DNA of 64,000 nucleotides from Dendrobates tinctorius. Its lineage: Eukaryota. The notes beneath the pieces are model-generated. The model was not told the origin of the DNA. It saw nothing but the letters and a program-made list of their open reading frames with translations, and did no database searches. Shown here piece by piece: positions 4,660 to 39,454 of this stretch. Position 1 is the first letter of the stretch. Each line of letters starts with the position of its first letter. The translations under genes were made by a program, and so were the position numbers. The stretch lies in NCBI RefSeq assembly GCF_039654945.1, contig NW_027361924.1:4526001-4590000 (forward strand). Direction: 5' to 3'.

Positions 4660-4711
4660 ATGGAGTTTCTACTGGGGAACCCGTACAGCACCCCGGTGGG
4701 CCAGTGTGTCG
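4660..4711 (+). CDS. TOM1L2: TOM1L2 exon 1
   Basis: AAGATGG start, [18 protein letters not shown]|gtaaga donor. Confidence 0.95.
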
Positions 4712-7700
4712 GTAAGAGGCCCGCGGGCCGGACCGTGTCTTCTACCGTCCATCTATAGAGTACAGGGCCTCCATGTACACACACAGCCCGTATATATACA
4801 CAGAGCCCGCATACACAGCCTGCATATACACACAGCCTGCATATACACACAGCCCGTATATACACAGAACGTGTATACACAGAGCCCGTATACACAGCAA
4901 GTATATACACACAGCCCGTATATATACACAGAGCCCGTATATATACACAGAGCCCGCATACACAGCCCGTATATACACAGCCTGCATATACACAGAGCCC
5001 GTATATACACAGCCCGTATATACACAGAACCCGTATACACAGCAAGTATATACACACAGCCCGTATATACACAGCCCGTATATACACAGCCCGTATATAC
5101 ACAGAGCCCATATACACAGCAAGTATATACACACAGCCCGTATATACACAGCCCGTATATACACAGCCCGTATATACACAGAACGTGTATACACAGAGCC
5201 CGTATACACAGCAAGTATATACACACAGCCCGTATATACACAGCCCGTATATACACAGCCCGTATATACACAGAGCCCATATACACAGCAAGTATATACA
5301 CACAGCCCGTATATACACAGCCCGTATATACACAGAACGTGTATACACAGAGCCCGCATACACAGCCTGCATATACACACAGCCTGCATATACACAGAGC
5401 CCGTATATACACAGAACGTGTATACACAGAACCCGTATACACAGCCCGTATATACACACAGCCCGTATATACACACAGCCCGTATATACACACAGCCCGT
5501 ATATACACAGCCCGTATATACACAAAGCCCATATACACAGCAAGTATATACACACAGCCCGTATATACACAGCCCGTATATACACAGCCCGTATATACAC
5601 AGAACGTGTATACACAGAGCCCGCATACACAGCCTGCATATACACACAGCCTGCATATACACAGAGCCCGTATATACAGAGCCCGTATATACACAGAACG
5701 TGTATACACAGAGCCCGTATACACAGCGCGTATATACACACAGCGCGTATACACACAGCCCGTATACACACAGCCCGTATACACACAGCCCGTATATACA
5801 CAGCCCGTATATACACAGAACGTGTATACAGACAGCCCATATACATACACAGAGCCCGTATACACAGCGCGTATATACACACAGCCTGCATATACACACA
5901 GCGCGTATACACAGAGCCCGTATATACAGAGCCCGTATACACAGCAAGTATATACACACAGCCCGTATACACACAGCCCGTATGTATACACAGAGCCCGC
6001 ATACACAGCCTGCATATACACACAGCCCGTATGTATACACAGAGCCCGTATATACAGAGCCCGTATATACACAGAACGTGTATACACAGAGCCCGTATAC
6101 ACAGCGCGTATATACACAGCGCGTATATACACAGCCCGTATATACACAGCCCGTATATACACAGCCCGTATATACACAGAACGTGTATACAGACAGCCCA
6201 TATACATACACAGAGCCCGTATACACAGCGCGTATATACACACAGCCTGCATATACACACAGCGCGTATACACAGAGCCCGTATATACAGAGCCCGTATA
6301 CACAGCAAGTATATACACACAGCCCGTATACACACAGCCCGTATGTATACACAGAGCCCGCATACACAGCCTGCATATACACACAGCCCGTATGTATACA
6401 CAGAGCCCGCATACACAGCCTGCATATACACACAGCCTGCATATACACAGAGCCCGTATATACACAGCCCGTATATACACAGAACGTGTATACACAGAGC
6501 CCGTATACACAGCAAGTATATACACACAGCGCGTATACACACAGCCCGTATGTATACACAGAGCCCGCATACACAGCCTGCATATACACACAGCCTGCAT
6601 ATACACAGAGCCCGTATATACACAGCCCGTATATACACAGAACGTGTATACACAGAGCCCGTATACACAGCAAGTATATACACACAGCGCGTATACACAC
6701 AGCCCGTATACACACAGCCCGTATGTATACACAGAGCCGCATACACACCAGGGCTGTGGAGTCGGTAAGCCAAACCTGTGACTCCGACTCCTCAATTTCC
6801 CTTACACCGACTCCGACTCCGACTCCACGACTCCCACTCCCACACATATTGCTTATATTTAAGTGAAAAATTTATTGTAGTACAATGTGAACATCAGACA
6901 TTTAATCATTTTTATGATCCAATAATCAAGATATTTAGATAGAACAGAATATATATTGGTGTACTACCCGGTTTTCATTCTTTTTGGTACAGATACGATA
7001 TGGATAGACAGATATGGATAAATGGATAGATAGAGCTGAAAAACGTATCCTCAAAAAACACAGGAAAAACGCTGTGTGTGAATGTAGCCTTAGATCAGGA
7101 ATATAACAGCCATTTATAGGACATTTCATAACTTTCCCAAATTCCTATGAAAAAATATTCAGCACATCCTGCATTGAATTACTGTACCCAATTTATTATA
7201 TATTTTAGGAGTCGGTCCATTTTATACCAACTCCGACTCCGACTCCACCAAAATGAGCTCCGACTCCGACTCCGACTCCACAGCCCTGATACACACGCAG
7301 CCCATATAAACACAGACAGCCCGTATACACACGCACAGAGCCCGTATACAGGCAGCCCATATACGCACACAGAGCGTGTATACACACACAGAGCCCATAT
7401 ACAGACAGCCCGTATACACACACAGCCCGCATACATAGAGCCCGTATACACACACAGGCCACAGCCCGTATACAGACAGCCCATATACATACACAGAGCC
7501 CGTATACACAGCCCGTATATACACACAGAGCCCGTATACACAGCAAGTATATACACAGAGCCGCATACACACACACAGAGCCCGTATATACAGCAAGTAT
7601 ATACACAGCCCATATATATACACACAGCCCGTATGTATACACAGCCCGTATATACACAGAACGTGTATACAGACAGCCCATATACATACACAGAGCCCGT

Positions 7701-17400: not shown

Positions 17401-20400
17401 TTTTTTTTTTTTTTTTCTAACATATTTTTTATTTTTGTGTTTTGGCAGAAAAAGCCACAGATGGCTCCCTGCAGAGCGAAGACTGGACGCTGAACATGGA
17501 GATCTGTGACATAATCAACGAGACGGAGGAAGGGTGAGTTCAGCGCAGGGACCCTGCGGGTGAACTTCTCGCAGGTTCTGTGACACATTGGAGTCATTAC
17601 TGATCCAGAAAGGTTACATATATCTGTCGCCTCCATGCTGACGTCATCCAAACAGTCGCCTTAAGCACATGGTTCAGAATCAGAATTTTCATGAAAACCT
17701 GATTTATTGCATTTGATGGGGTGGTAGGTTAGAGGGAAGTTACCATAAAAAGAAAAAATTGGACCCCAAACTTTTTTCAGTACCCCCTGTTTTTTTGTTT
17801 TTTTTTCCCTTAGGCCAAAAGATGCAATTCGAGCCCTGAAGAAGAGGCTGAACGGGAACAAGAATTACAGAGAAGTGATGCTGGCGCTGACGGTACGCAA
17901 AGTTCTACAACTTTCTAACTTGCTTTGTGTTTCAATTACAAGATGCGCTGTACTCACCCTCCCTGGGTCCATCACTGAGTCTCTGCTGCTTCTCCCAGTG
18001 TCTGTAACTGACTGCAGCGTTAAGAGCACTGCAGCCAATCACTGAGCTCAGCGTCTCTATCCTGATAGATGGAGCACGCCCGCTCACTGATTTTTAGAGT
18101 GCTAGCAAAAGCTATGAGATTTCAGAAATGCACACTCTTGTTTTTTTTTTTTTTTTTTCCCTGATTGAGTTGGAAAACTGCAGCTTCATTTAAATCTGCA
18201 GCATGTCAATTCTTTTCACATGTTTGCAGGTTTTTTCACCCATAGAAAGCAATGAGAAAGTGAAAAAACGCTGCATTTCAGTGAATAAAACTAACTTTGT
18301 TATACTTGCACACGTATAATCCACACCCGAAATGCACTGAAAAAAAAACAAAACTGTGAAAGTGCTGAAAAATGGGTGTTTGGGAAAAAAAAAATCACTG
18401 CATGTGAACATAGTCTAAGAATGTCCCCATTTACTGATCGCAACCAAAGCTCTTAAAGACAGTAATAGGAATGCTAACGTCTCTTTTCTCCTTCGTCTCA
18501 TTGGGGGACACAGGTACTGTGGGGTGTATGCTACTGCCGTCTGGAGGCTGACACTAAGTATACAAAAAAAAAAGTTAGCTCCTCCTCCGCCGCATATACC
18601 CTCGCCCCGATTGCGGGCGGAAACCAGTTTTTTGCTTAGTGTCCTATGTAGGCACACACAGTCTGGATCTCTCCAGACAGGGGTGACGGATCCTATTGAA
18701 AGGCTCCGATCTCCCCAAACCATCAGCGGGCGAGCACGCGTTGAGTATCGCCTCCGCGGATCCTTTCCCGCACTGAGGGACATCTCTGGGACTTTTCACT
18801 GGACATCTATTTTTCTTTATTCTTTTTTATGAAGATTAGACAGGGGCAACGCATCCTATTGAAAACCATCAACGGGCGAGCACGTGCGAGTGTCCCTCCA
18901 CGTATCCTTTCCCGCAACGTGGGACATTATGCCAGACTTAGCCCTGTCCACCCCTAGGTATTGAAACCATGGGCATGCACAGAGGCACAAGACTAGTCTG
19001 TGCGGCCCCCACTGCTCCACCAACGCAAGACGGCGGTGCTGCATGGCGGCGGACGATCCCTCTCCTCGCCCCTGAAGGCAGACGGAGCTAGGGTGCCTGC
19101 ACCGTCCAAAAATGAATTACCCCAGGTGCTGCTACCCAGTGGCTGGAGAAGCAGGTATGGAGCTGGGGAAGGCCCTGGGCAGCGTTTGGCAGGGGGTCGC
19201 ACTATTAAATCCCCTGATGTTTGCCACTGGTTATCAGTGATATATTGTCGGGGCTAGGGCTGTGATTGGCAGTCTCCATTCCCCCCCTCTCCTCCTCCCT
19301 TCCCCTCCTCCCTCCCTGTACCTGCACGTGGCTGAGGAGAGCGGCATGAAAGACAGCAGGGCCGCGGATGTGGAGCACCGCCAGCGGAGGTGAAGGAGAG
19401 TGGAGACCGGCGGGGTAGTGGGGCCGTCAGCGCACGGGCGGGCGGTGACTAATTTAGCCCGCGGCTTCGGCCTAGGCCGCAGATGAAAGTTCCGCCTCCC
19501 CCACCCCCCCGCCCCGGCGTGACGTCATATCCGGCGCCGCCCCCCGTGGCTAGGGCAGGCGCCGGATAAATTGAGGCCCCGGCTTTTAGTACAGGGTAGG
19601 CCACGACCGGGAGAGCACCTCGCAGCCTGCCCAGAGGTGAAGGAGCGCATCGGAGCCAGACCCAGGAGCGCGGGGGGGGCACACAGGAGCAGGGTAAGTG
19701 CGACCCCGTCCCGGAGCCACACTACGCGCATTAAGGGGTTATCCTCCTCCTCTTCCTCCTTTCCCTTCAAATTTTCATAAATTGGCCTAATCAGCAATAT
19801 GTCTGGGAAAGGAAAAACGCACACGTTCCTTTATGCCGCATGCGTTTCCTGTGGGGTTATGTTCCCACGAGCGCAGACTATTAAGTTATGTGAAGCCTGT
19901 GACTCCGAACGCGCCCAGGAGCCCTCCCCTGCGACGGAGCCCAGGGGTCTGGATCCCCCCGGAATGGGCGTTATCACTCTCGCGGTCCATGGTTTCGCTT
20001 ACGAAGGCGATCGAGACCCTTCAGGCCCCGGATAGGGGCAGAGATGATGGCTCGCCTGTCTGGGAAGGTTCATCCACCTCACAGGAGCCTCCGACCTGCA
20101 GGGGCCGCACTCTCTCTAGGCAGACTCATAGGAATATAACCCACACTGCGTCTCCGGGCCCCTCCGGTGCTTCGGCATCCGTGAGTGCGGTATCTCATTC
20201 ACCGTCACCATTTTCCGGGAGCGAGCAGAGTTCAGGTTATGACGCGGAGGAATCCCTGGACCTGGATACCCCGGGGTGTCGGGAGACGGTAGACAGTCTC
20301 ATTGAAGCTGTCAATCAGACTTTGGTATTGAGGAGGATGTCTCCCTAACCTCAGGTCATAAGGTATCCTTTAAGAAGGCCAGGCGACCGCATAGAGTGTT

Positions 20401-23400
20401 TAGCACTCATCCAGAGTTCGAGGAAATAGTGCAGCGTCACAGGGAACGTCCAGACAAGCGTTTTTCGGGCCAAAAAACGCTAGCAATGAGATAACCGTGT
20501 GCACCAGAGCTCTGTAAGAGATTGGCGAAATCTCCGATTGTGGATCCCCCATTGTTACGCTTGGCCTCAAGAACTTTGTTGTCGGTGCCTAGTGTTTCTT
20601 CCATTAAAGACCCAACGGTCGGCTCAGAGAGAGTTTGGCCCGCTCGGTGTATGAGGCATCAGGATCAGCGCTCTCTCCTTCATTTGCGGCAACATGGGTA
20701 GCCAAGGCCATGATGTCATGGTCAGATTCTTTAAATAAGGTCCTACAGGATAGAGACCTGCCGACGGAAGTGTCTGAGATAGCAGGTCAGATTGCGATGG
20801 CGGGTGACTATTTAATCAATGCGTCCTTAGATGCGGCTAATTGCGCAACACTAGCGGCGGCGAATGCAATCGCCATTAGAAGAGCCCTGTGGTTAAGGCT
20901 ATGGCGGGCTGATTCGATTTCCAAGAAATCCTTGACTTCCCTGCCTTATCAGGGTAGCCGCCTGTTTTGGGGAAAAATTGGACAAACTCATCTCAGATGC
21001 TACGGGGGGAAAAAGCAGTTTTCTCCCACAGCAGAAAATTAAACTGCCATTTCGTCAGCCTCAGGCACGCTTTCGAGCATTTCGCTTCCCCGGGTGGATG
21101 GCAGCGGCCAGTTTTGCCGCCCCAGCTCGCTACAACCAAGACAAGGAGCGTCAGGTCACGTATAGAGCCATCCCGCTGGGCAGGATGCAAGGCCGCCCGC
21201 CCAGGTCGAGGGGGGGGGCCAGGTCCCAGAAGCCCTCAGACAAATGACTCGGGGCATCCGTTACCCGAGGACGGCAGAGTGGGCGGACATCTACTCCGGT
21301 TCCGCCACGTCTGGGTCGCGGTAGCACGCGACGCATGGGTGGCGGAATTAGTGTCGTCCGGGTGCAAAATAGAATTTGTCAGACATCCTCCAAGATGATT
21401 TTTTTCTTTCCCGGCTTCCCAAAGCGGAATCCCGGGCAGAGGCGTTGCTAGGGGCCATCAAGGTATTTCAGCGCAACGGGGTCATTGTCCCTGTACCAGA
21501 GTGCGAGAGAACTCAAGGTTTTTATTCCAACCTGTTCGCAGTTCCCAAGAAGGTCGGGACAGTAAGGCCGGTTCTGGACCTAAAGCTCCTGAACAGGTTC
21601 ATCAGAATCAGGCACTTTCAAATGGAATCTCTCCGTTCAGTCATATCGGCCATGGAGCAGGGAGAATACTTGGCCTCGATCGACGTCCAGGATGCTTACC
21701 TGCACGTCCCTATTTTTCCCCCGCATCAAAGGTTCCTACGTTTTGCAATCGATGGTTGGCATTTCGAATTTGTAGCTCTGCCTTTCGGGTTGGCCACCGC
21801 CCCCAGAGTGTTCACAAAGGTAATGGCTGTCGTCATGGCCATTCTACACTCTCGGGGCATAGTGGCTTTACCGTACTTAGACGACCTCTTGGTGAAAGGT
21901 CCGTCCTTTCGGGCATGCAAGGAAAATGTCAACATCACGCTGGATACCCTATCGCGCCTAGGATGGTTGGTCAACGGGAAAAAGTCATCCCTTGTCCCAG
22001 CTCAGAGGATTTCGTTCCTAGGGATGATTTTCAACACCTCCCGAGGGTTGGTAACTCTCCCTCAGTACAAGGCTCGAGCGCTCCGGCAGGGAGTTCGGAA
22101 ACTTCAACAACCAGGCCCTCACACCATTCGGTTCGGGATGAGGGTTCTAGGGAGGATGGTGGCGGCAATGGAAGCGATTCCGTTTGCCCAATTTCATCTT
22201 CGTCCCCTGCAGCATGCTCTCTTGACATCTTGGGACAGGAGTCCATTCACGCTTGATCATCAGTGCAGGTTGTCCTTTCGAGTCAGACGGTCACTGCAGT
22301 GGTGGACGCGCGCGACTCCTCTCTTCTTCAGGGGAAACCTTTTCCCCCAGATCAATGGTTGGTGATCACAACCAATGCGAGTCTTCTCGGTTGGGAAGCA
22401 GTTTTTCGCCATCACACAGCTCAGGGGCAATGGTCGCATCAGGAGGCACGCCTCCCGATCAACTTGCTGGAGATACGAGCCGTGCGGCTGGCACTGCAAC
22501 ATTTCCAGCACATTCTAGCAGGACATCCGGTCCGGATTCAATCGGACAACGCCACGGTAGTGGCGTACGTGAATCACCAGGGAGGCACGCGCAGCAGGGC
22601 AACCATGCGCGAGATAGCATGTACTAAGCTGGGCCGAGGGGAACCACTCGGTAATCTCAGCAGTCCACATACCAGGCGTGGAAAATTGGGCAGCGGACTT
22701 CCTAAGCTGGCAGGGTGTCGTGGCCGGGGAATGGTCCCTGCACCCCGAAGTCTTCCAGCAGATTGCCAATGGTGGGGGACACCGGACGTGGATCTGATGG
22801 CCTCCAGGGTAAACGCCAAAATGGCCGTGTTTGTCGTTCGGTCTCGAGACCCGCGAGCAATCGCAGTGGATGCGTTGGTCCTACCATGGAACCAGTTTCG
22901 GCTCCCATACCTGTTTCCCCCGCTGCCACTACTTCCGAGGGTCATCAGGAAAATCAAGACAGAGGGGGTTCTGGCAATTCTGCTGGCCCCAGACTGGCCC
23001 CATCGGGCATGGTACGCGGATCTAGTGCAGCTCCTCGCAGACGTTCCTTGGCGTCTGCCGGAACGACCAGACTTACTGTCTCAGGGGCCGATCTGCCACC
23101 CGAACTCAGGGGCCCTGTGTTTGACGGCATGGCCGTTGAATCTTGGATTCTGACCCAGGCGGGGTTTGGGCGTGAAGTGGTTGCTACAATGGTTAGCGCC
23201 CAGAAGCCTACCTCGGCGAGAATTTACCATCACACTTGGAAGGTTTTCTTTCGTTGGTGTCGAGAGGCACGGGGTTGCTCCACTATCCTTCTTGGTTCCC
23301 AACATCCTGGCTTTTCTTCAGTCAGGCCTAGACGCAGGATTGGCCCCGAGCTCCCTTAGGAGACAGATATCGGCCTTGTCTGTCCTCTTCCAGCGAAGGA

Positions 23401-26400
23401 TCGCTACTAATATGCAGGTCAAGACGTTCATTCAAGGGGTCTCTCATTTGGTGCCCCCCTATAGAGCGCCCATAGACTCCTGGGATCTTAACCGTGTCCT
23501 GCTGGAAGCTCCTTTTGAGCCGTTACAAGAAATTTCATTATCATACCTTTCCAGGAAGCTCGTATTCTTGGTAGCCATAACTTCCATTAGGCGGGTCTCG
23601 GAGTTGGCAGCCCTATCTTGTAGAGCACAGTTTCTTACCTTTTACAAGGATAAGGTGGTCCTTAGACCAGCTCCTCCCTTTCTGCCGAAGGTCGTGTCCT
23701 CTTTCCACATTAATGAGGACATTGTGCTGCCTTCATTTTGTCCAGCGCCAGTACATAGGGTGGAAAGGGCGCTCCACACTTTGGACCTAGTAAGAGCGCT
23801 CAGGAGGTACGTGTCGAGGACGGCACCTTTTCGACAGACTCACTGTTTGTGATCCCCGAAGGGCGCAGGAAGGGGCTCGCAGCCTCAAGGTTGACCATAG
23901 CCAGATGGATTCGTCTAACTATTCAAGAGGCTTACCGTATTAGAGGCACACCGATTCCAGCAGGGATATAGGGGCGCACTCTACTCGGGCAGTGGGCGCT
24001 TTGGCACCAGGCTTCGGCAGAGCAGGTATGGAAGGCGGCAACCTGGTCCAGCCTACATACTTTTTCTAAGCATTACAATGTGCATACTCAGGCTTCGTCA
24101 GATGCGAGCCTGGGTAGAAAAATTCTCCAAGCAGCAGTGGCGCACCTTTAGACAGGAGGGCATGCCGCTTGGATTGGTGAGTTGACTTCCCACCCAGGGA
24201 CTGCTTTAGGACGTCCCACAGTACCTGTGTCCCCCAATGAAACGAAGGAGAAACATGGATTTTTGTGAGTGCTCACCGTAAAATCCTTTTCTCCGAGACG
24301 CTCATTGGGGGACACAGCACCCACCCTGATAGCCAGTTGGCTCTTGTTTATTTAATGAATATAATTCCTTTTTTAAATTAAGGTGGTCCTTTTTCAGACA
24401 TATGGTATTCTGCTTTAAGGCTAAATTGTTTTTGTGTTCTCCTACTGCTATTGCACTAAAATGGTTTCTGCCCGCAATCGGGGCGAGGGTGTATGAGGAG
24501 GAGCTAACTTTTTTTTTGTATACTTAGTGGTCAGCCTCCAAACGGCAGTAGCATACACCCCACAGTACTTGTGTCCCCCAATGAGCGTCTCGGAGAAAAG
24601 GATTTTACGGTGACTACTCACAAAAATCCATGTTTCTCTGACTTTTTTTCCTCAGGTTTTGGAGACTTGTGTGAAGAATTGTGGCCATCGATTTCATGTG
24701 CTTGTGACGCACCGCGACTTTATAGATGGAGTCCTGGTAAAAATCATCTCTCCTAAGAACAACCCCCCGACCATCGTGCAGGATAAAGTCCTGGCCCTGA
24801 TACAGGTGGGCAGCGCAGGGTGCTACTGGGACAAGGAGCTGAGCCCTCTTCTCCCATGTTCTTGAGCCCTATCTCTGTCTCCCTCTCTTTTCTTTTTTCG
24901 CTTTCTCTATTTTCTTTTTCTTTCTGTTTCTCTCTTTTTCACTCCCTTTCTCTTTTTTTTTTTTTCCTCTCGTGTCTTTTTTCTTTCTCTTTTCCTTTTT
25001 TCCCTTTTTCTGTCTTTCTTTCTTTCTTTCTTTCTCGCTCTCTCGCACTCCCTCATGACATTCCAATGTGTGTGGGGGGCTTTACTGATGCCCTCACATT
25101 CCTATGTTCTCTCGCTCTCTCTGGCCCTCACATTCCTATGTTCTCTCGCTCTCTCTGGCCCTCGCATTCCTATGCTCTTTCTCTCTCTCTGGCCCTCACA
25201 TTCTTTTGTTCTCTCTCTGGCCCTCACATTCCTATGTTTTCTCTCTCTTTCTTTCTTTTTCTCTCTCTCTCTCTCTGGCCCTCACATTCCTATGTTTTCT
25301 TTCTCTTTTTTTTTTTTGCTCGCACTCTCGCCCTCGCCCTCACATTCCTATGTTCTCTCTATGGCCCTCACATTTCTATGTTCTCTCTCTCTCTCTGGCC
25401 TTCACATTTCTATGTTCTCTCGCTCTCTCTGGCCTTCACATTCCTATGTTCTCGCTCTGGCCCTCATATTCCTATGTTCTCTCTCTCTCACTCTCACTCT
25501 CCCTCTCCCTCGCATTCCTGTTCGCTCTCTCTGGCCCTCGCATTCCTANNNNNNNNNNNNNNNNNNNNNNNNNNNNNNNNNNNNNNNNNNNNNNNNNNNN
25601 NNNNNNNNNNNNNNNNNNNNNNNNNNNNNNNNNNNNNNNNNNNNNNNNNNNNNNNNNNNNNNNNNNNNNNNNNNNNNNNNNNNNNNNNNNNNNNNNNNNN
25701 NNNNNNNNNNNNNNNNNNNNNNNNNNNNNNNNNNNNNNNNNNNNNNNNNNNNNNNNNNNNNCTCTCTCCCTCCTATGCGCTCTATCTGGCGCTCGCATTC
25801 CTGTTCGCTCTCTCTGGCCCTCGCATTCCCATGTTCTTTCTCTCTCTCTGGCCCTCACATTCCTCTGTTCTCTCTCTGGCCCTCATGTTCCTATGTTCTC
25901 TCTCTCTCTGGCCCTCATGTTCCTATGTTCTCTCTCTCTCTCTGGCCCTCACGTTCCTGTGTTCTCTCTCTCTCTCTGGCCCTCACGTTCCTGTGTTCTC
26001 TCTCTCTCTCTGGCCCTCACGTTCCTGTGTTCTCTCTCTCTCTCTGGCCCTCACGTTCCTGTGTTCTCTCTCTCTCTCTCTGGCCCTTACGTTCCTGTGT
26101 TCTCTCGCTCTCTCTGGCCCTTACGTTCCTGTGTTCTCTCGCTCTCTCTGGCCCTTACGTTCCTGTGTTCTCTCGCTCTCTCTGGCCCTTACGTTCCTGT
26201 GTTCTCTCGCTCTCTCTGGCCCTTACGTTCCTGTGTTCTCTCGCTCTCTCTGGCCCTTACGTTCCTGTGTTCTCTCTCTCTCTCTCTCTGGCCCTTACGT
26301 TCCTGTGTTCTCTCTCTCTCTCTCTGGCCCTCACGTTCCTGTGTTCTCTCTCTCTCTCTCTGGCCCTCACGTTCCTGTGTTCTCTCGCTCTCTCTGGCCC

Positions 26401-29400
26401 TTACGTTCCTGTGTTCTCTCGCTCTCTCTGGCCCTTACATTCCTGTGTTCTCTCGCTCTCTCTGGCCCTCACGTTCCTGTGTTCTCTCTCTCTCTCTCTG
26501 GCCCTCCCGTTCCTATGTTCTCTCTCTCTCTCTGGCCCTCACATTCCTCTGTTCTCTCTCTCTGGCCCTCACATTCCTCTGTTCTCTCTATGGCCCTCAC
26601 ATTCCTATGTTCTCTCTCTCTGGCCTTCACATTCCTATGTTCTCTCGCTCTCTCTGGCCCTCACATTCCTATGTTCTCTCTCTGGCCCTCACATTCCTCT
26701 GTTCTCTCTCTCTCTGGCCCTCACATTCCTATGTTCTCTCGCTCTCTCTGGCCCTCACATTCCTATGTTCTCTCCCTCTGGCCCTCACGTTCCTATGTTC
26801 TCTCTCTCTCTCTGGCCCTCACGTTCCTGTGTTCTCTCGCTCTCTGGCCCTTACGTTTCTGTGTTCTCCCTCTCCCTCTCCCTCTCCCTCTCCCTCTCCC
26901 TCTCCCTCTCCCTCTCCCTCTCCCTCTCCCTCTCCCTCTCCCTCTCCCTCCTCCTCCCCCCCCCCCCCCCTATTCCTATCTCTGGTCCTCACGCTCCTAT
27001 GTTCTCTCTCTCTGGCCCTCACATTCCTATGTTCTCTCTCTCTGGCCCTCACATTCCTATGTTCTCTCTCTTTTGCTCTTTCTCTAGACCTCCTTTTTTC
27101 TCCCCTTGTCCTCTGTTTCTCATTCGTGAATCATATTAACAATCACTAGTTAAAAATTAGTGAGCAAATTACCTGATAAATAAGACATTGGACACTGATC
27201 GCTCTAGTGCCGCGTGTCCCATCAGCTGGATGGCGGCTCATATGAGGTTTCTCTGGGTAGATCATATGTCCCTGGGCAGACCGCTGGGCTCCTGTGTCAC
27301 AGGGACCTCGCTGTGCCGGGGACCTCAGCAGCCTCAGTACCCAGCAGGCTTTTCTCCGGCTCATCTATCCCCATCATCCCTGGCTTTTTGGCTATTGAGA
27401 CAGTCAGCGAGGTAAGCGACGCTCTTATGAGGATGATCGGGTACAAGACCTGAGGTTTGAGAAGTCTCGATCGTTTTTGGCATCTTTTTGTGACTGCGAT
27501 GGTGTTATTCTCCCTCATATAGATGGGATTTAGACTTCGTGCTTCCCGTGTGCATTCATGTTGCCAGATAGCAGAACCTGCAATGTTTTGTGCGGTGACA
27601 TTCCTGCTCCAATTGTCCTCCTTCCACAAGTATCTGTGGACAGTAATGTCTCTGGGATTTCATCTATGTCTCTTATCTCTCTGTTCCTGTTTTCCAGGCT
27701 TGGGCCGACGCGTTTCGGAGCAGCCCCGACCTCACCGGAGTGGTGCATATTTATGAAGAGCTGAAAAGAAAAGGGATTGAGTTTCCCATGGCCGATCTCG
27801 ATGCCCTGTCTCCGATACACACTCCACAAAGGGTAGGAAATCACCTTTAATTTGTAGAAAATCTCATGCGACGCACATCCGTGCAGATCTGGAAAAGGAC
27901 AGGACCTTAGGGACCCAAGAATTTTTAATTTTTCCCTACTTCTATTCCAAGAGCCATACCTTTTTTTTTTTTGTGGTGGTGGGAGTTTTGTTTCTACAGC
28001 GTTTATTGTATGGTAAAAACTGGGTAATTTTTTTTTTATTTTTTAATCATTTTAAACAAATTAAATATTTTACTATTCTTACGGTTTGTCACCTACGGAA
28101 ACTAAGAAAATGATGGAAAAATGAAAAATAAACACATATTATTTTTTTAAATCTATTTTGTACATGTGTATATTTTTTATAACGTTTTATTTTTAATTTT
28201 TCATTTATTTTTTTAGTGTCCCTAGGTGACAGAAACCTACAATAATTTGATCGCTTACACTATATAATTCAATACCACAGTGTTACGGTATGTAGAGGAG
28301 CCGCGATCTCCTGTGCCGTCTGCAGGGTCCGGGCCACTGAATTTTCTTGCAGACAGAGACTACAGGATTAATAATTCATAGCTGCAGTGTATCGGGTGCA
28401 GTGTGTCCTCTGCTGTCAGTCTTAGTGTGCGCTCTACATGATTATCGGCAGCTGCAGTACATTGCTAGGAAAAGTCCAATTATTCGGCACATGACTCTCC
28501 AGACCTGTGACCACACAGACTATAGGACTGTAGCTGCCAGGCCGAAGTTTCCCTTGTAATGTGTCCTGTTTTACACAGAGCGTGCCCGAGGTGGACCCCG
28601 CTATGAACATGCATACGCCCCAGTCCCACCAGCGGGCGAACTCGGGTTCTTTCTCGTCATCTCCGGCGCCATTCACCACCCCAGCAGCACCTACGCCAAG
28701 CGTGCGTGGGCCAATCACTGCCAACTCAGAACAGGTAAGCCATAGGCTTTCACGGGCCATGTCCGGAGTCATCGCCACTGCTCACTATATCTACGCGGTC
28801 ACGTCTTCTGCTTACACTCCAGATCGGCCGCCTGAGGAGCGAGCTGGATATCGTTCGCGGAAACACTAAGGTCATGTCTGAGATGCTGACGGAGATGACT
28901 CCTGGCCAAGAAGACGCCTCTGATCTGGAGCTTCTGCAGGTAGGGGGCGCTCCGCCGATACAGAGGATGGATCCCCGCATTATTGGGATTCGGATCTGGG
29001 CCCAGACTGTCCGTGTTTATAGGACCTGAACCGGACCTGCCGAGCGATGCAGCAGCGGATCGTGGAGCTGATCTCTCGAGTGTCCAACGAGGAGGTGACC
29101 GAGGAGCTGCTGCACGTCAACGACGACTTGAATAACGTCTTCCTCAGATATGAAAGGTAAGGAAGAAGCGTTGTGGAGAGCCTGACGCCGCACGTCCTCC
29201 TGACTAATGGCCGTTCCTTCTTCATTAGGTTCGAGCGCTACAGGTCAGGCCGCGCCGCTCCGAACACGAACGGGGTGAGACTGCGCCGGAGCCGCTTTAA
29301 GCTTGTAGTCCCCCCCCCCCCCCCCCCCTAAATAGTAGCCACTGATTATGTATTTCCCGTCGCAGATGCTGAGTGAGGTCACGGAGGATAATCTGATAGA

Positions 29401-38400: not shown

Positions 38401-39454
38401 AAGGGGATCTGGAGAGGCCGGTGCGGTGGGAGGGGATCTGAGGAGGTTGGTGCAGTGAGATTGGAGGGGATCTGGGGAGGCCGGTGCGGTGGGAGGGCAT
38501 CTTGGGAGGCCGGTGGGAGTGGATCTGGGGAAGCCTGTGCAGTGGAAGGGGATCTGAGGAGGCAGGTGCGGTGGGAGGGGATCTGGGGAAGCTGGTGCGG
38601 TGAGATTGGAGGGGATCTGGGGAAGCCGTTGCGGTGGGAGGGGATCTGGGGAAGCCGTTGCGGTGAGATTGGAGGGGATCTGGGGAAACCGTTGCGGTGG
38701 GAGGGGATCTGGGGAGGCCGCTGCGGTGGGAGGGGATCTTGGGAAGCCGGTGCGGCGAGATTGGAGGGGATTTGGGGAAGCCGGTGCGGTGAGATTGGAG
38801 GGGATTTGGGGAAGCCGGTGCGGTGAGATTGGAGGGGATTTGGGGAGGCCGGTGCGGTGGGATTGGAGGGGATCTGGGGAAGCCGGTTGCGGTGAGATAG
38901 GTGGGATCTGGTGAGGCCGGTACGGGTGGGAAGGGATCTGGGGAGGCCGGTACGGGTGGGATCTGGCGAAGCCGATGCGGTGGGAGGGGATCTGGGGAAG
39001 CCGGTGTGGTGAGATTGGAGGGGATCTGGGGAGGCTGGTGCGGTGGGAGGGGATCTGGGGAAGCCGGTGTGGTGAGATTGGAGGGGATCTGGGGAGGCTG
39101 GTGCGGTGGGAGGGGATCTGGGGAGGCCGATGCGGTGAGATTGGAGGGGATCTGGGAAGGCCGGTGCGGTGGGAGGGGATCTGGGGAGGCCGGTGCGGTG
39201 AGATTGGATTGGCTCTGGGGAGGCTGGTGCCGTGGGATTCCATCGGCCTTTCCCTGACCCCTTCCGGAGTGATGGGGATTTATTTATCAATCTTTCCTTT
39301 TACAGAATTTGACAAGTTTCTGGAAGAACGAGCCAAAGCCGTAGAGCATGTCCCGGACCTCCCGTCTCCCCCCACCACAGAGCCCTCCGTGACAGAGAAT
39401 CCCACAAATCGGAAGAAGCAGGAGCGGGTGGATGACTCTCTGTTTGCGTTGTAA
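4660..39454 (+). CDS. TOM1L2: TOM1-like protein 2 (VHS + GAT endosomal adaptor), complete; 504 aa without / 526 aa with cassette exon
   Basis: Exons 4660-4711, 17449-17533, 17814-17892, 24656-24805, 27698-27832, 28579-28734, 28823-28939, 29023-29156, 29229-29274, 29366-29486, 29830-29947, 30843-30918, (31396-31461), 34648-34707, 37726-37762, 39306-39454 join in frame with GT-AG introns: [30 protein letters not shown] ... [11 protein letters not shown] ... DDSLFAL*. Confidence 0.97.
4770..8560. repeat. Compound minisatellite of ~16-18 bp units (TATACACACAGCCCG variants), interrupted by a MITE
   Basis: Visible tandem variants CAGCCCGTATATACA / CAGAGCCCG / CAGCAAG / CAGAACGTG. Confidence 0.95.
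6749..7288. mobile_element. hAT-type non-autonomous element (MITE), copy 1
   Basis: TIR CAGGGCTGTGGAGTCGG...CCGACTCCACAGCCCTG, 8-bp TSD ATACACAC on both sides, subterminal (GACTCC)n. Confidence 0.9.
8560..10060. repeat. 42-bp minisatellite (TATACAGTCCTGTATACCCCATATACTCACTATACTCCTCTA)
   Basis: 42-bp period, seen as 14-aa repeats in the ORF track. Confidence 0.95.
10563..10978. repeat. 24-bp near-perfect tandem array (~17 copies) grown from the arm of a MITE-like element starting ~10430
   Basis: CCGAATACGGAGGTAAAATGCTGA repeated; inverted single copy at 10439-10480. Confidence 0.92.
11722..13354 (-). mobile_element. Tc1/mariner-superfamily DNA transposon, DD38E type, full length with ~270-bp TIRs
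   Basis: TA|CAGTACAGACCAAAAG ... TTTGGTCCGTACTG|TA; TIRs ~11722-11989 and ~13084-13354; internal transposase. Confidence 0.95.
11885..12937 (-). pseudogene. Tc1-like transposase with 5' lesions (GTG at the likely start 12937; in-frame TAA at 12877-12875); 319 codons open downstream
   Basis: GRPR linker, [16 protein letters not shown] and SPDLNPIE motifs; 38 residues between the second D and E. Confidence 0.9.
14487..14789. mobile_element. Palindromic MITE (PIF/Harbinger-like)
   Basis: TGTGCACACGTTGCGGATTTGGCTGCGGAT ... ATCCGCAGCCAAATCCGCAGCGTGTGCACA inverted arms; TGA on both flanks. Confidence 0.75.
15165..15660. repeat. Degenerate ~43-bp tandem repeat (CTGCTCTGTGATTGGTTGCTACACTGCTGTGGTAAAATGACAG)
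   Basis: About 10 diverged units. Confidence 0.8.
17449..17533 (+). CDS. TOM1L2: TOM1L2 exon 2 (VHS)
   Basis: ggcag|AA ... GG|gtgagt; [29 protein letters not shown]. Confidence 0.97.
17814..17892 (+). CDS. TOM1L2: TOM1L2 exon 3 (VHS)
   Basis: cttag|G ... ACG|gtacgc; [26 protein letters not shown]. Confidence 0.97.
19799..21247 (+). pseudogene. DIRS ORF1 (gag-like), frameshifted
   Basis: N-terminal CxxC...CxxC, then [14 protein letters not shown]...[10 protein letters not shown] and [12 protein letters not shown] segments split across frames with stops. Confidence 0.75.
21248..23153 (+). pseudogene. DIRS reverse transcriptase / RNase H / methyltransferase-like ORF, frameshifted
   Basis: [46 protein letters not shown]; RNase H INLLE / SDNAT; DLMAS...YLFPP. 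Confidence 0.92.
23140..24150 (+). pseudogene. DIRS tyrosine recombinase ORF, frameshifted
   Basis: [23 protein letters not shown], downstream GAHSTRAVG and HTFSKHY motifs. Confidence 0.9.
24656..24805 (+). CDS. TOM1L2: TOM1L2 exon 4 (VHS)
   Basis: ctcag|GTT ... CAG|gtgggc; [17 protein letters not shown]...DKVLALIQ. Confidence 0.97.
24870..27070. repeat. Pyrimidine-rich tract and ~34-40 bp minisatellite (CTCTGGCCCTCACATTCCTATGTTCTCT...), with assembly gap 25549-25761
   Basis: Visible tandem units, (CTCTCC)n at ~26865-26950, 213 Ns. Confidence 0.93.
27698..27832 (+). CDS. TOM1L2: TOM1L2 exon 5
   Basis: [45 protein letters not shown]; AG/GT flanks. Confidence 0.97.
28579..28734 (+). CDS. TOM1L2: TOM1L2 exon 6
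   Basis: SVPEVDPA...GPITANSEQ|gtaagc. Confidence 0.95.
28823..28939 (+). CDS. TOM1L2: TOM1L2 exon 7 (GAT)
   Basis: [39 protein letters not shown]. Confidence 0.97.
29023..29156 (+). CDS. TOM1L2: TOM1L2 exon 8 (GAT)
   Basis: [45 protein letters not shown]. Confidence 0.97.
29229..29274 (+). CDS. TOM1L2: TOM1L2 exon 9
   Basis: [15 protein letters not shown]; attag|G ... GGG|gtgaga. Confidence 0.93.
29366..29486 (+). CDS. TOM1L2: TOM1L2 exon 10 (clathrin-box-like LIDLG)
   Basis: [28 protein letters not shown]. Confidence 0.95.
29830..29947 (+). CDS. TOM1L2: TOM1L2 exon 11
   Basis: SVSSTLS...[22 protein letters not shown]. Confidence 0.95.
30145..30630 (+). repeat. ~54-57 bp tandem array, 9 copies, each with CACCACTAGGGGGAGCTC or a close variant
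   Basis: Visible units GATCCTGTCTGCAGTCACCACTAGGGGGAGCTCCCTGTATACAGAGATACAT. Confidence 0.92.
30843..30918 (+). CDS. TOM1L2: TOM1L2 exon 12
   Basis: [25 protein letters not shown]|gtatgt. Confidence 0.95.
31396..31461 (+). CDS. TOM1L2: TOM1L2 candidate cassette exon (66 nt, phase 0-0)
   Basis: Long T tract + cccag|AGG ... ATG|gtgagc; [22 protein letters not shown], open and frame-preserving. Confidence 0.75.
32085..33200. repeat. 30-bp purine-rich minisatellite (GAGGGGGGATCCTGGAGAGGAGGAGCATAT), ~37 copies
   Basis: 30-bp period, seen as 10-aa repeats in all frames. Confidence 0.95.
34648..34707 (+). CDS. TOM1L2: TOM1L2 exon (myosin VI-binding-type motif LEEWL)
   Basis: [20 protein letters not shown]; tgtag|ATT ... 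GTG|gtgaga. Confidence 0.93.
34860..36665 (+). repeat. 41-bp minisatellite (TAATCCCTCCCACTGATGACATCATACACATACACCTCTTG)
   Basis: 41-bp period with 35-bp variants. Confidence 0.95.
36680..37606 (-). repeat. 40-bp minisatellite, inverted relative of the preceding array
   Basis: GATGTCATCAGTGGGAGGGATTA is the reverse complement of TAATCCCTCCCACTGATGACATC. Confidence 0.93.
37726..37762 (+). CDS. TOM1L2: TOM1L2 penultimate exon
   Basis: [12 protein letters not shown]; tacag|AAG ... G|gtaaat. Confidence 0.95.
38165..39235. repeat. G-rich ~29-37 bp minisatellite (GGAGGGGATCTGGGGAGGCCGGTGCGGTG)
   Basis: Visible tandem units. Confidence 0.92.
39306..39454 (+). CDS. TOM1L2: TOM1L2 last coding exon
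   Basis: [23 protein letters not shown]...[14 protein letters not shown]. Confidence 0.97.

What the first reader, a model, noticed from the sequence alone, without database searches (positions are those of the whole stretch)
24601..24655. DIRS retrotransposon inserted between branch point and acceptor of TOM1L2 exon 4 and appears to supply a replacement branch point
Seen: the element ends at 24638, only 17 nt before exon 4. Removing 6.15 kb at the shared TTTCTC rebuilds ...ATGCTAACGTCTCTTTTCTCTGACTTTTTTTCCTCAG|exon, with a consensus CTAAC branch A (18477) at -31. In the present allele that branch point is stranded 6 kb away, while the element's right terminus offers TACTCAC (A at 24620, -36) with no AG before the true acceptor. 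Inference: an essential splice signal of a conserved gene is now TE-derived. A TTTCTC-type integration core would bias such elements to polypyrimidine tracts, so branch-point-bearing ends may be a tolerance mechanism.
Basis: partly seen in the sequence, partly recalled or inferred. Interest (0 to 1): 0.75.

Follow-up and report, generated by a model that had tools for sequence, protein, structure and literature searches.

The report
Retrotransposon wedged against TOM1L2 exon acceptor
A dead 6.15-kb DIRS retrotransposon sits 17-20 bases in front of a conserved frog TOM1L2 exon and cuts off the intron's best branch-point motif, but it is unproven that the element now supplies the branch point, because a good host motif 15 bases from the exon also survives.

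Summary
A DIRS1-like retrotransposon occupies 18485-24638 in the sense orientation. It has inverted terminal repeats, an internal complementary region (ICR), a LAP2alpha-like gag, RT/RNase H and a twice-frameshifted tyrosine recombinase. It lies in TOM1L2 intron 3, 17 nt (20 nt by the 3-bp junction rule) upstream of exon 4 (24656-24805). The ICR fixes both ends. Deleting the element rebuilds TGCTAAC with its A at -31.

It survives the insertion.
- The element's TACTCAC (A 24620, -36) pairs better with U2 and sits at a more usual distance. I put it at about 55% to be the main branch point, but probably redundant rather than essential.
- The "TTTCTC core / polypyrimidine bias / tolerance mechanism" idea gets no support. 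The published DIRS1 junction is 3 bp (TTT in frogs). Five related insertions are not in pyrimidine tracts, and related termini lack CTCAC.

No dendrobatid orthologous locus could be fetched. Lariat mapping remains decisive.

The parts
17815..17892 (+). TOM1L2 exon 3 ([26 protein letters not shown]); intron 3 starts with GTACGC at 17893
18471..18477 (+). Stranded ancestral branch-point motif TGCTAAC (A 18477). It would sit at -31 in the rebuilt empty site and is now 6.18 kb from the acceptor.
18485..24638 (+). DIRS1-like retrotransposon, 6154 nt, in sense to TOM1L2. TTTCTC is present at both ends and once in the ICR. By the 3-bp TTT rule the element proper would be 18485-24635.
18485..18635 (+). 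Left terminus and left inverted terminal repeat
   Evidence: I2-I6
18512..18513 (+). First AG (CAG|G) downstream of the stranded BPS and its pyrimidine run, 36 nt from A18477. Candidate decoy or cryptic acceptor inside the left ITR.
   Evidence: inference
20635..21042 (+). gag-like ORF fragment with a LAP2alpha domain
   Evidence: E 1.6e-10
21376..23153 (+). RT (21376-22365) and RNase H (22263-23153), in different frames
23189..24139 (+). Tyrosine recombinase gene, broken by two frameshifts (frames 1>2>1)
24215..24316 (+). Internal complementary region (ICR). It is the reverse complement of the joined right and left termini.
24453..24638 (+). Right ITR (24453-24585) and right extension (24586-24638)
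24603..24608 (+). TTTTAC (A 24607, -49). A weak YTNAY that is conserved in all related right ends.
24611..24616 (+). Donor-like motif of DIRS right ends. It is degraded here to GTGACT, against GTGAGC in the ICR-derived copy and GTGAGT/GTAAGT in relatives.
24615..24621 (+). Element-derived branch-point candidate TACTCAC (A 24620, -36)
24636..24642 (+). Host branch-point candidate CTCTGAC (A 24641, -15). It matches YNYTRAY perfectly and is unchanged by the insertion.
24643..24655 (+). Polypyrimidine tract TTTTTTTCCTC and the acceptor AG
24656..24805 (+). TOM1L2 exon 4 ([14 protein letters not shown]...ALIQ), VHS domain, 150 nt; the donor GTGGGC is at 24806

Best explanation
A DIRS1-like retrotransposon integrated into the 3' end of TOM1L2 intron 3, between the intron's strongest branch-point sequence and the acceptor of exon 4. 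It did so through its tyrosine recombinase, at a TTT(CTC) microhomology. The copy has since decayed. Exon 4 still has an intact acceptor, an 11-nt pyrimidine tract and a 55-nt AG-free zone. That zone holds two good branch-point candidates. One lies in the element's right extension (TACTCAC, A24620, -36). The other is in host DNA (CTCTGAC, A24641, -15). The most likely outcome is redundant branch-point use, with the element-derived adenosine as the main site because of its more usual distance and stronger U2 pairing, and the host -15 site as a back-up. The branch-point-like motif is a by-product of a terminal segment that the element keeps for its own replication, since that segment is mirrored in the ICR. 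It is not an adaptation for tolerance. What is shown: the anatomy, the boundaries, the motifs and the decay. What is inferred: which adenosine is used, that exon 4 is included normally, and that the insertion is old or fixed.
For: - Anatomy and boundaries.
- The rebuilt site and the candidate table with U2 pairing (TE 5 pairs and 12 H-bonds; host 4 pairs and 9 H-bonds; old site 6 pairs and 13 H-bonds).
- Distance statistics. 90% of human branch points lie at 19-37 nt with a median of 25, and stronger U2 pairing is selected more often (PMC4315302). 88% lie in [-15,-40] and 68% of introns have several branch points (PMC9636908).
- Chance of such a motif in arbitrary sequence is 3-21%.
- Decay. 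There are 3 of 102 ICR/termini mismatches and two frameshifts in the recombinase, plus a frame break between RT and RNase H. The copy is therefore not new, and a conserved gene has lived with it.
- Transposons can introduce or remove branch points in minigene experiments (PMC7969005).
Against:
- No empty allele or close orthologue was obtained.
- The sequence right after A24620 is A-rich, and the true pyrimidine tract starts 23 nt downstream. The host site abuts the tract directly.
- One study quoted in PMC9636908 found that the branch points closest to the 3' splice site matter most.
- Fixation of the insertion is inferred from decay only.
Confidence: 0.55

Rival explanations
1. Host-only splicing. 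The CTCTGAC at -15 with its adjoining T7CCTC tract carries exon 4 splicing by itself, as it may already have done in part before the insertion. The element contributes no used splice signal.
For: It matches YNYTRAY perfectly, lies directly upstream of the pyrimidine tract and is untouched by the insertion. A distance of -15 lies within the [-15,-40] window that holds 88% of human branch points, and proximal branch points are reported as the most influential (PMC9636908).
Against: -15 falls in the lower 5% tail of the Mercer distribution (19-37 nt holds 90%). It pairs with U2 less well than the element motif. The motif is not conserved in distant orthologues.
Confidence: 0.25
2. The insertion is harmful or only partly tolerated. 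On this allele exon 4 is often skipped, which would delete 50 in-frame residues of the VHS domain. Or exon 3 is spliced to the decoy acceptor at 18513 that the stranded BPS and pyrimidine run now face. In either case the allele would be polymorphic, or compensated by the other haplotype.
For: Insertions 9-35 nt upstream of acceptors cause exon skipping in dogs (FAM161A at -15/-16, HCRTR2 at -35, SILV at -9; PMC3976383). Full-length sense retroelements within 20 bp of acceptors are almost absent from human and mouse genomes (PMC3088655). The first AG after A18477 is a CAG 36 nt downstream, and new AGs more than 8-12 nt downstream of a branch point are used as 3' splice sites (PMC7969005).
Against: The element has decayed, which argues for long persistence in a conserved gene. 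The acceptor, the tract and two branch-point candidates are intact. The stretch just upstream of 18513 is G-rich (TTGGGGGAC), which makes a poor acceptor.
Confidence: 0.15
3. Assembly artefact. A DIRS copy was placed in this intron by mis-assembly.
For: DIRS elements are abundant in this genome (115 notes), and the junction could not be checked in reads.
Against: Both junctions fall exactly at the ends predicted by the copy's own ICR. The flanks rejoin into a coherent 615-nt intron with a normal 3' end. DNA runs of the species hold about half of the stretch's sampled words.
Confidence: 0.03

Closest known systems
DIRS1-like retrotransposons of amphibians (XtDIRS2 and XtDIRS3 of Xenopus tropicalis; Piednoel et al. 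2011, PMC3266345)
   Same: About 6 kb long, with ITRs, two ICRs that overlap on a circular junction, a right extension, gag/RT/RNase H/tyrosine recombinase, TTT at both ends, and no target-site duplication.
   Different: In this copy the two ends match over 6 nt (TTTCTC) rather than 3, probably because the target lay in a pyrimidine run. The right extension reads ...GTGAGCACTCAC... where relatives have GTGAGTACAC. The copy is dead, with frameshifts.
Pathogenic retroelement insertions just upstream of acceptors (canine FAM161A SINE at -15/-16, HCRTR2 SINE at -35, SILV/PMEL SINE at -9; PMC3976383)
   Same: The insertion falls between the branch point and the acceptor and moves the branch point hundreds of bases or kilobases away.
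   Different: Those insertions cause exon skipping and disease. Here the element is old and decayed in a conserved gene, and the new upstream sequence is AG-free and carries a branch-point motif, so the insertion is probably tolerated.
Transposon-introduced or transposon-eliminated branch points in OGDH intron 4a (Kralovicova et al. 2021, PMC7969005)
   Same: A transposed element changes which branch points an acceptor can use. The same AG-exclusion-zone logic applies.
   Different: That work concerns distant branch points and mutually exclusive exons, tested in minigenes. This case is a constitutive exon with a proximal site and has not been tested.
Hazardous zones for transposable elements in introns (Zhang, Romanish and Mager 2011, PMC3088655)
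   Same: It places this case in the rarest class: a long, sense-oriented element within 20 bp of a splice acceptor.
   Different: That is a statistical pattern in mammals. No frog or DIRS data are given there.

Membership tests
DIRS1-like retrotransposon (order DIRS) | Encodes a tyrosine recombinase instead of an integrase | tested here: met
   The ORF at 23166-23852 hits proteins named Tyr recombinase or core-binding domain, and PF13495 in P0095. Its homologue P0093 matches Phage_integrase at E 0.001, which is below the curated threshold. The window ORF itself has no Pfam hit.
DIRS1-like retrotransposon (order DIRS) | Reverse transcriptase and RNase H | tested here: met
   RVT_1 at E 8e-19 and RT_RNaseH at E 4e-6
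DIRS1-like retrotransposon (order DIRS) | Inverted terminal repeats, plus an internal complementary region that mirrors both outer ends and overlaps on a short circular junction | tested here: met
   (99 of 102 positions match; junction GAGAAA/TTT); definition from PMC3266345
DIRS1-like retrotransposon (order DIRS) | Begins and ends with the junction trinucleotide (NTT; TTT in Xenopus) and makes no target-site duplication | tested here: inconclusive
   TTT(CTC) is present at both ends and once in the ICR. Without a real empty site, a single shared copy cannot be proved.
DIRS1-like retrotransposon (order DIRS) | Methyltransferase domain after RNase H | tested here: inconclusive
   No Pfam hit in ORFs 22715-23359 or 23166-23852, even at E 1. 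The copy is degraded.
Transposon-derived functional branch point | Lariat 2'-5' junction mapped to a nucleotide inside the element | not testable with these tools
All the runs are kept as contigs only.
Transposon-derived functional branch point | A YTNAY/U2-pairing motif at 15-40 nt from the acceptor with no intervening AG | tested here: met
   TACTCAC, A at -36, 5 U2 pairs, inside the 55-nt AG-free zone
Transposon-derived functional branch point | No competing host branch point remains, which is what would make the signal essential | tested here: not met
   Host CTCTGAC with its A at -15 remains
TOM1L2 exon 4 (VHS domain) | Collinear exons encoding the TOM1L2 VHS/GAT protein | tested here: met
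   Exons 2-5 are identical to Eleutherodactylus coqui KAG9470211.1 apart from the model's start residues. Twelve exons map to frog TOM1L2 proteins. PF00790 hits appear.

The most novel reading that the evidence does not exclude
The right terminus of this DIRS lineage acts as a portable intron 3' module: a branch-point motif followed by an AG-free spacer. Sense insertions into the last 20 nt of an intron would then be survivable, and the main or only branch point of a constitutive TOM1L2 exon would now be transposon DNA. After insertion, the conserved donor-like GTGAG of the terminus, 42 nt upstream of the acceptor, would have been inactivated by selection (24614 G>C).
Probability: 0.15. Interest if true: 0.65.

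Novelty: new member of a known kind. Interest (0 to 1): 0.42.

Why it matters
Long sense-oriented retroelements within 20 nt of an acceptor are almost never tolerated, and the known cases cause exon skipping and disease. This locus is a natural experiment. The strongest branch-point sequence of a short intron was moved 6 kb away, yet the gene is conserved and the insertion looks old. Mapping the lariat here would show whether vertebrate splicing falls back on a very proximal host site at -15 or adopts a transposon-borne site at -36. It would also show whether the splice-like signals that DIRS termini carry interact with host splicing. The value is as a test case, not as a new mechanism.

Tried and rejected
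1. Read evidence. The look-up of sequencing runs gave 24 runs, all kept as contigs only and none on record as RNA.

2. Empty site in relatives.
   - The ORF across exon 4 found only distant vertebrates whose introns do not align. Mammal-type hits that might be human (P0003, P0004, P0008, P0263, P0299, P0353, P0375) were left aside, and no contig of theirs was fetched.
   - I ran the large representative search although the operators called it costly and this use met neither of the conditions they set for it. I judged it the only route to a full-length TOM1L2 and hence to an orthologous locus. It returned the E. coqui protein.
   - The E. coqui, Engystomops and Hyla products are not on record. 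The Gastrophryne gene range is too long. Mantella intron 3 (197 nt) is not alignable.
   - Dendrobatid TOM1L2 proteins did not appear in the last word search. Their absence is possibly because their isoforms exceed the 507-aa length ceiling.

3. No other copy of the element lies in the window. The search of earlier findings by sequence was blank.

4. Rejected reading: a 6-bp TTTCTC recombination core.

5. Rejected reading: that exon 4 skipping would shift the frame. The exon is 150 nt.

Full report
WHAT IS THERE

The window carries the whole TOM1L2 gene on the + strand. Exon 1 lies at about 4660-4728, exon 2 at 17442-17534, exon 3 at 17815-17892, exon 4 at 24656-24805 and exon 5 at 27689-27832. 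Further exons run to 39305-39451. Exons 2-5 translate to the same residues as the annotated Eleutherodactylus coqui protein KAG9470211.1, apart from that model's first residues. Later exons differ from E. coqui, Engystomops and Mantella, so the window comes from another frog.

Intron 3 runs from 17893 to 24655 and is 6763 nt long. Of that, 6154 nt are one retrotransposon. The host part is only 615 nt.

THE ELEMENT

Positions 18485-24638 hold a DIRS1-like retrotransposon in the same orientation as the gene.
- Inverted terminal repeats lie at 18497-18635 and 24453-24585.
- The internal complementary region (ICR) at 24215-24316 is the reverse complement of the right end (24570-24638) joined to the left end (18485-18523). 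TTTCTC is present once in it.
- Aligned explicitly, 99 of 102 positions agree. The mismatches are at 24614, 24615 and 18497.
- Pfam finds a LAP2alpha-type gag fragment, RVT_1 and RT_RNaseH.
- The ORF at 23166-23852 is the tyrosine recombinase. Its homologues are named as such, one carries PF13495, and P0093 matches Phage_integrase weakly.
- The recombinase is interrupted by two frameshifts, and RT and RNase H are in different frames. The copy is therefore dead.

In the DIRS model each new copy's termini are rebuilt from the ICR (PMC7192593; PMC3266345). The three mismatches and the frameshifts must then have arisen after insertion. The insertion is not recent, although three differences give only a very rough age.

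All of it checks.
- The element ends 17 nt before exon 4.
- Removing it at the shared TTTCTC rebuilds ...TGCTAACGTCTCTTTTCTCTGACTTTTTTTCCTCAG|, with A18477 at -31.
- In the present allele TACTCAC has A24620 at -36.
- The nearest upstream AG ends at 24600, which leaves a 55-nt AG-free zone.

The 17-20 nt of host DNA left next to the exon contain CTCTGAC, with A24641 at -15. It matches YNYTRAY perfectly and is followed at once by T7CCTC and the AG. It was there before the insertion and is unchanged by it. The acceptor has therefore not lost every host branch-point option.

WEIGHING THE TWO SITES

- The element motif forms 5 U2 pairs (12 H-bonds). The host motif forms 4 pairs (9 H-bonds). The stranded TGCTAAC forms 6 pairs (13 H-bonds).
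- In human maps 90% of branch points lie 19-37 nt upstream with a median of 25, and stronger U2 pairing is chosen more often (PMC4315302).
- In a larger compilation 88% lie in [-15,-40], 68% of introns use several branch points, and the most proximal may matter most (PMC9636908).
- So -36 is within the usual range and -15 is at its edge. Against that, the host site abuts the pyrimidine tract, while the element site is followed by an A-run.

I estimate about 55% that the element's adenosine is the main branch point and about 25% that the host site does the work alone. The chance that the element site is indispensable is low.

As a null, arbitrary sequence from the element or the window placed at this spot gives a YTNAY at -19..-45 without a downstream AG in 11-21% of positions. 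It gives one with 5 or more U2 pairs in 3-8%. That is suggestive, not compelling.

THE INTEGRATION-CORE IDEA

The literature states that the two ICRs overlap on a 3-bp circular junction. It also states that elements begin and end with that trinucleotide (TTT/AAA in XtDIRS2 and XtDIRS3), and that integration is by recombination with an identical 3-bp genomic sequence, without target-site duplication (PMC3266345; PMC7192593).

I fetched related copies from R. variabilis, Anomaloglossus and R. imitator (L005-L007, 65-70% nucleotide identity).
- The full R. imitator copy starts with TTTTCTCCATC and ends with ...CCCTATTT|ATCAGC, while its ICR predicts ...CCCTATTTCTCCATTG. Its two ends therefore share only TTT.
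- The right flanks of five related insertions (TTTACAACC, CTCAGACGG, TTCGCTTTA, ATCAGCAGG, CTGAGGAGT) are not pyrimidine tracts.

The 6-nt match here is best read as the TTT junction plus three further bases that match because the target was pyrimidine-rich. The rebuilt empty site is the same either way.

THE TOLERANCE-MECHANISM IDEA

Related right ends read GATTTTACGGTGAGTACACAAAAATCC or GAATTTACGGTAAGTAACAAAATTCCC. What is conserved is ACG|GTGAGT or GTAAGT, a donor-like motif, plus TTTAC. CTCAC is not conserved. An earlier follow-up of this scan reached the same view of the donor-like motif on other DNA (s1-376919). CTCAC occurs only in this lineage, in both the terminus and the ICR-derived copy. 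I see no evidence that branch-point content is selected.

A curiosity: this copy's terminus reads GTGACT where its own ICR predicts GTGAGC. Two of the three post-insertion changes thus fall in the donor-like motif, which sits 42 nt upstream of the host acceptor. With three changes in 102 nt, this could easily be chance.

A SECOND CONSEQUENCE OF THE INSERTION

The stranded TGCTAAC and its pyrimidine run (18479-18499) now face a first AG at 18512-18513, a CAG|G inside the left ITR and 36 nt downstream. AGs more than about 8-12 nt downstream of a branch point are used as 3' splice sites (PMC7969005). This may therefore act as a decoy or cryptic acceptor, although the G-run just before it is unfavourable. 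Only one near-consensus sense donor lies in the element (AGG|GTAAGT at 19694).

CONTEXT

- Insertions 9-35 nt upstream of acceptors cause exon skipping in dogs (PMC3976383).
- Full-length L1 or LTR elements within 20 bp of acceptors number one or two per mammalian genome (PMC3088655).
- Transposons can add or remove branch points in minigenes (PMC7969005).

The case belongs to a known kind and is an unusually clean, apparently tolerated example.

LIMITS

- There is no read-level evidence. Those places were not sent to any tool afterwards. The N run at 25549-25761 was left alone.
- No close orthologue or empty allele was obtained, despite the exon-ORF search, the representative search and all twelve contig look-ups. 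I ran the representative search although the operators called it costly and this use met neither condition they set for it.
- Distant orthologues (Mantella L008 and the unidentified vertebrates L001-L004) have short introns with unrelated 3' ends. Their branch-point candidates range from -15 to -35, so they say nothing about which host site was ancestral.
- Exon 4 inclusion, fixation of the insertion and branch-point use are all inferences.

Noticed in passing
window 18471-18514: The stranded host branch-point motif and its pyrimidine run are followed by their first AG (CAG|G at 18512-18513) inside the element's left ITR, 36 nt downstream. This is a possible decoy or cryptic acceptor for exon 3.
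   Followed up: partly
window 24611-24616 versus 24271-24276 (ICR): The donor-like motif conserved at DIRS right ends (ACG|GTGAGT or GTAAGT in 6 related termini and 5 ICR-derived copies) reads GTGACT in this copy's terminus. Positions 24614 and 24615 are two of only three differences between the termini and the ICR.
   Followed up: partly
window 19691-19699: The only near-consensus sense-strand donor inside the element is AGG|GTAAGT at 19694. It probably corresponds to the gag intron donor described in earlier notes of this scan.
   Followed up: no
window 24820-27087: Intron 4 holds a long CT-rich, low-complexity repeat that reads as a 755-codon open frame across the N run at 25549-25761.
   Followed up: no
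L007 (R. imitator CAUEEQ010078690.1) and proteins P0099, P0108, P0128: Public R. imitator gene models (DCAF17-like, WD40/BEACH-like, Rab-21) include stretches 68-79% identical to this DIRS recombinase. They are either chimeric annotations or exonised DIRS sequence.
   Followed up: no
L006 6175-10900 (Anomaloglossus CM109171.1): Two tandem partial DIRS copies in sense orientation lie inside the range of a dynein light intermediate chain gene. Each has its own ICR and its own right end.
   Followed up: no
L007 2190-2210 and 8160-8180: The full R. imitator copy has ATCAG close to both junctions (caATCAGtg|TTTTCTCC and CCCTATTT|ATCAGcagg). This may be chance, or it may hint at a longer imperfect crossover region (TTTCTCC against TTTATCA, 5 of 7).
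   Followed up: no
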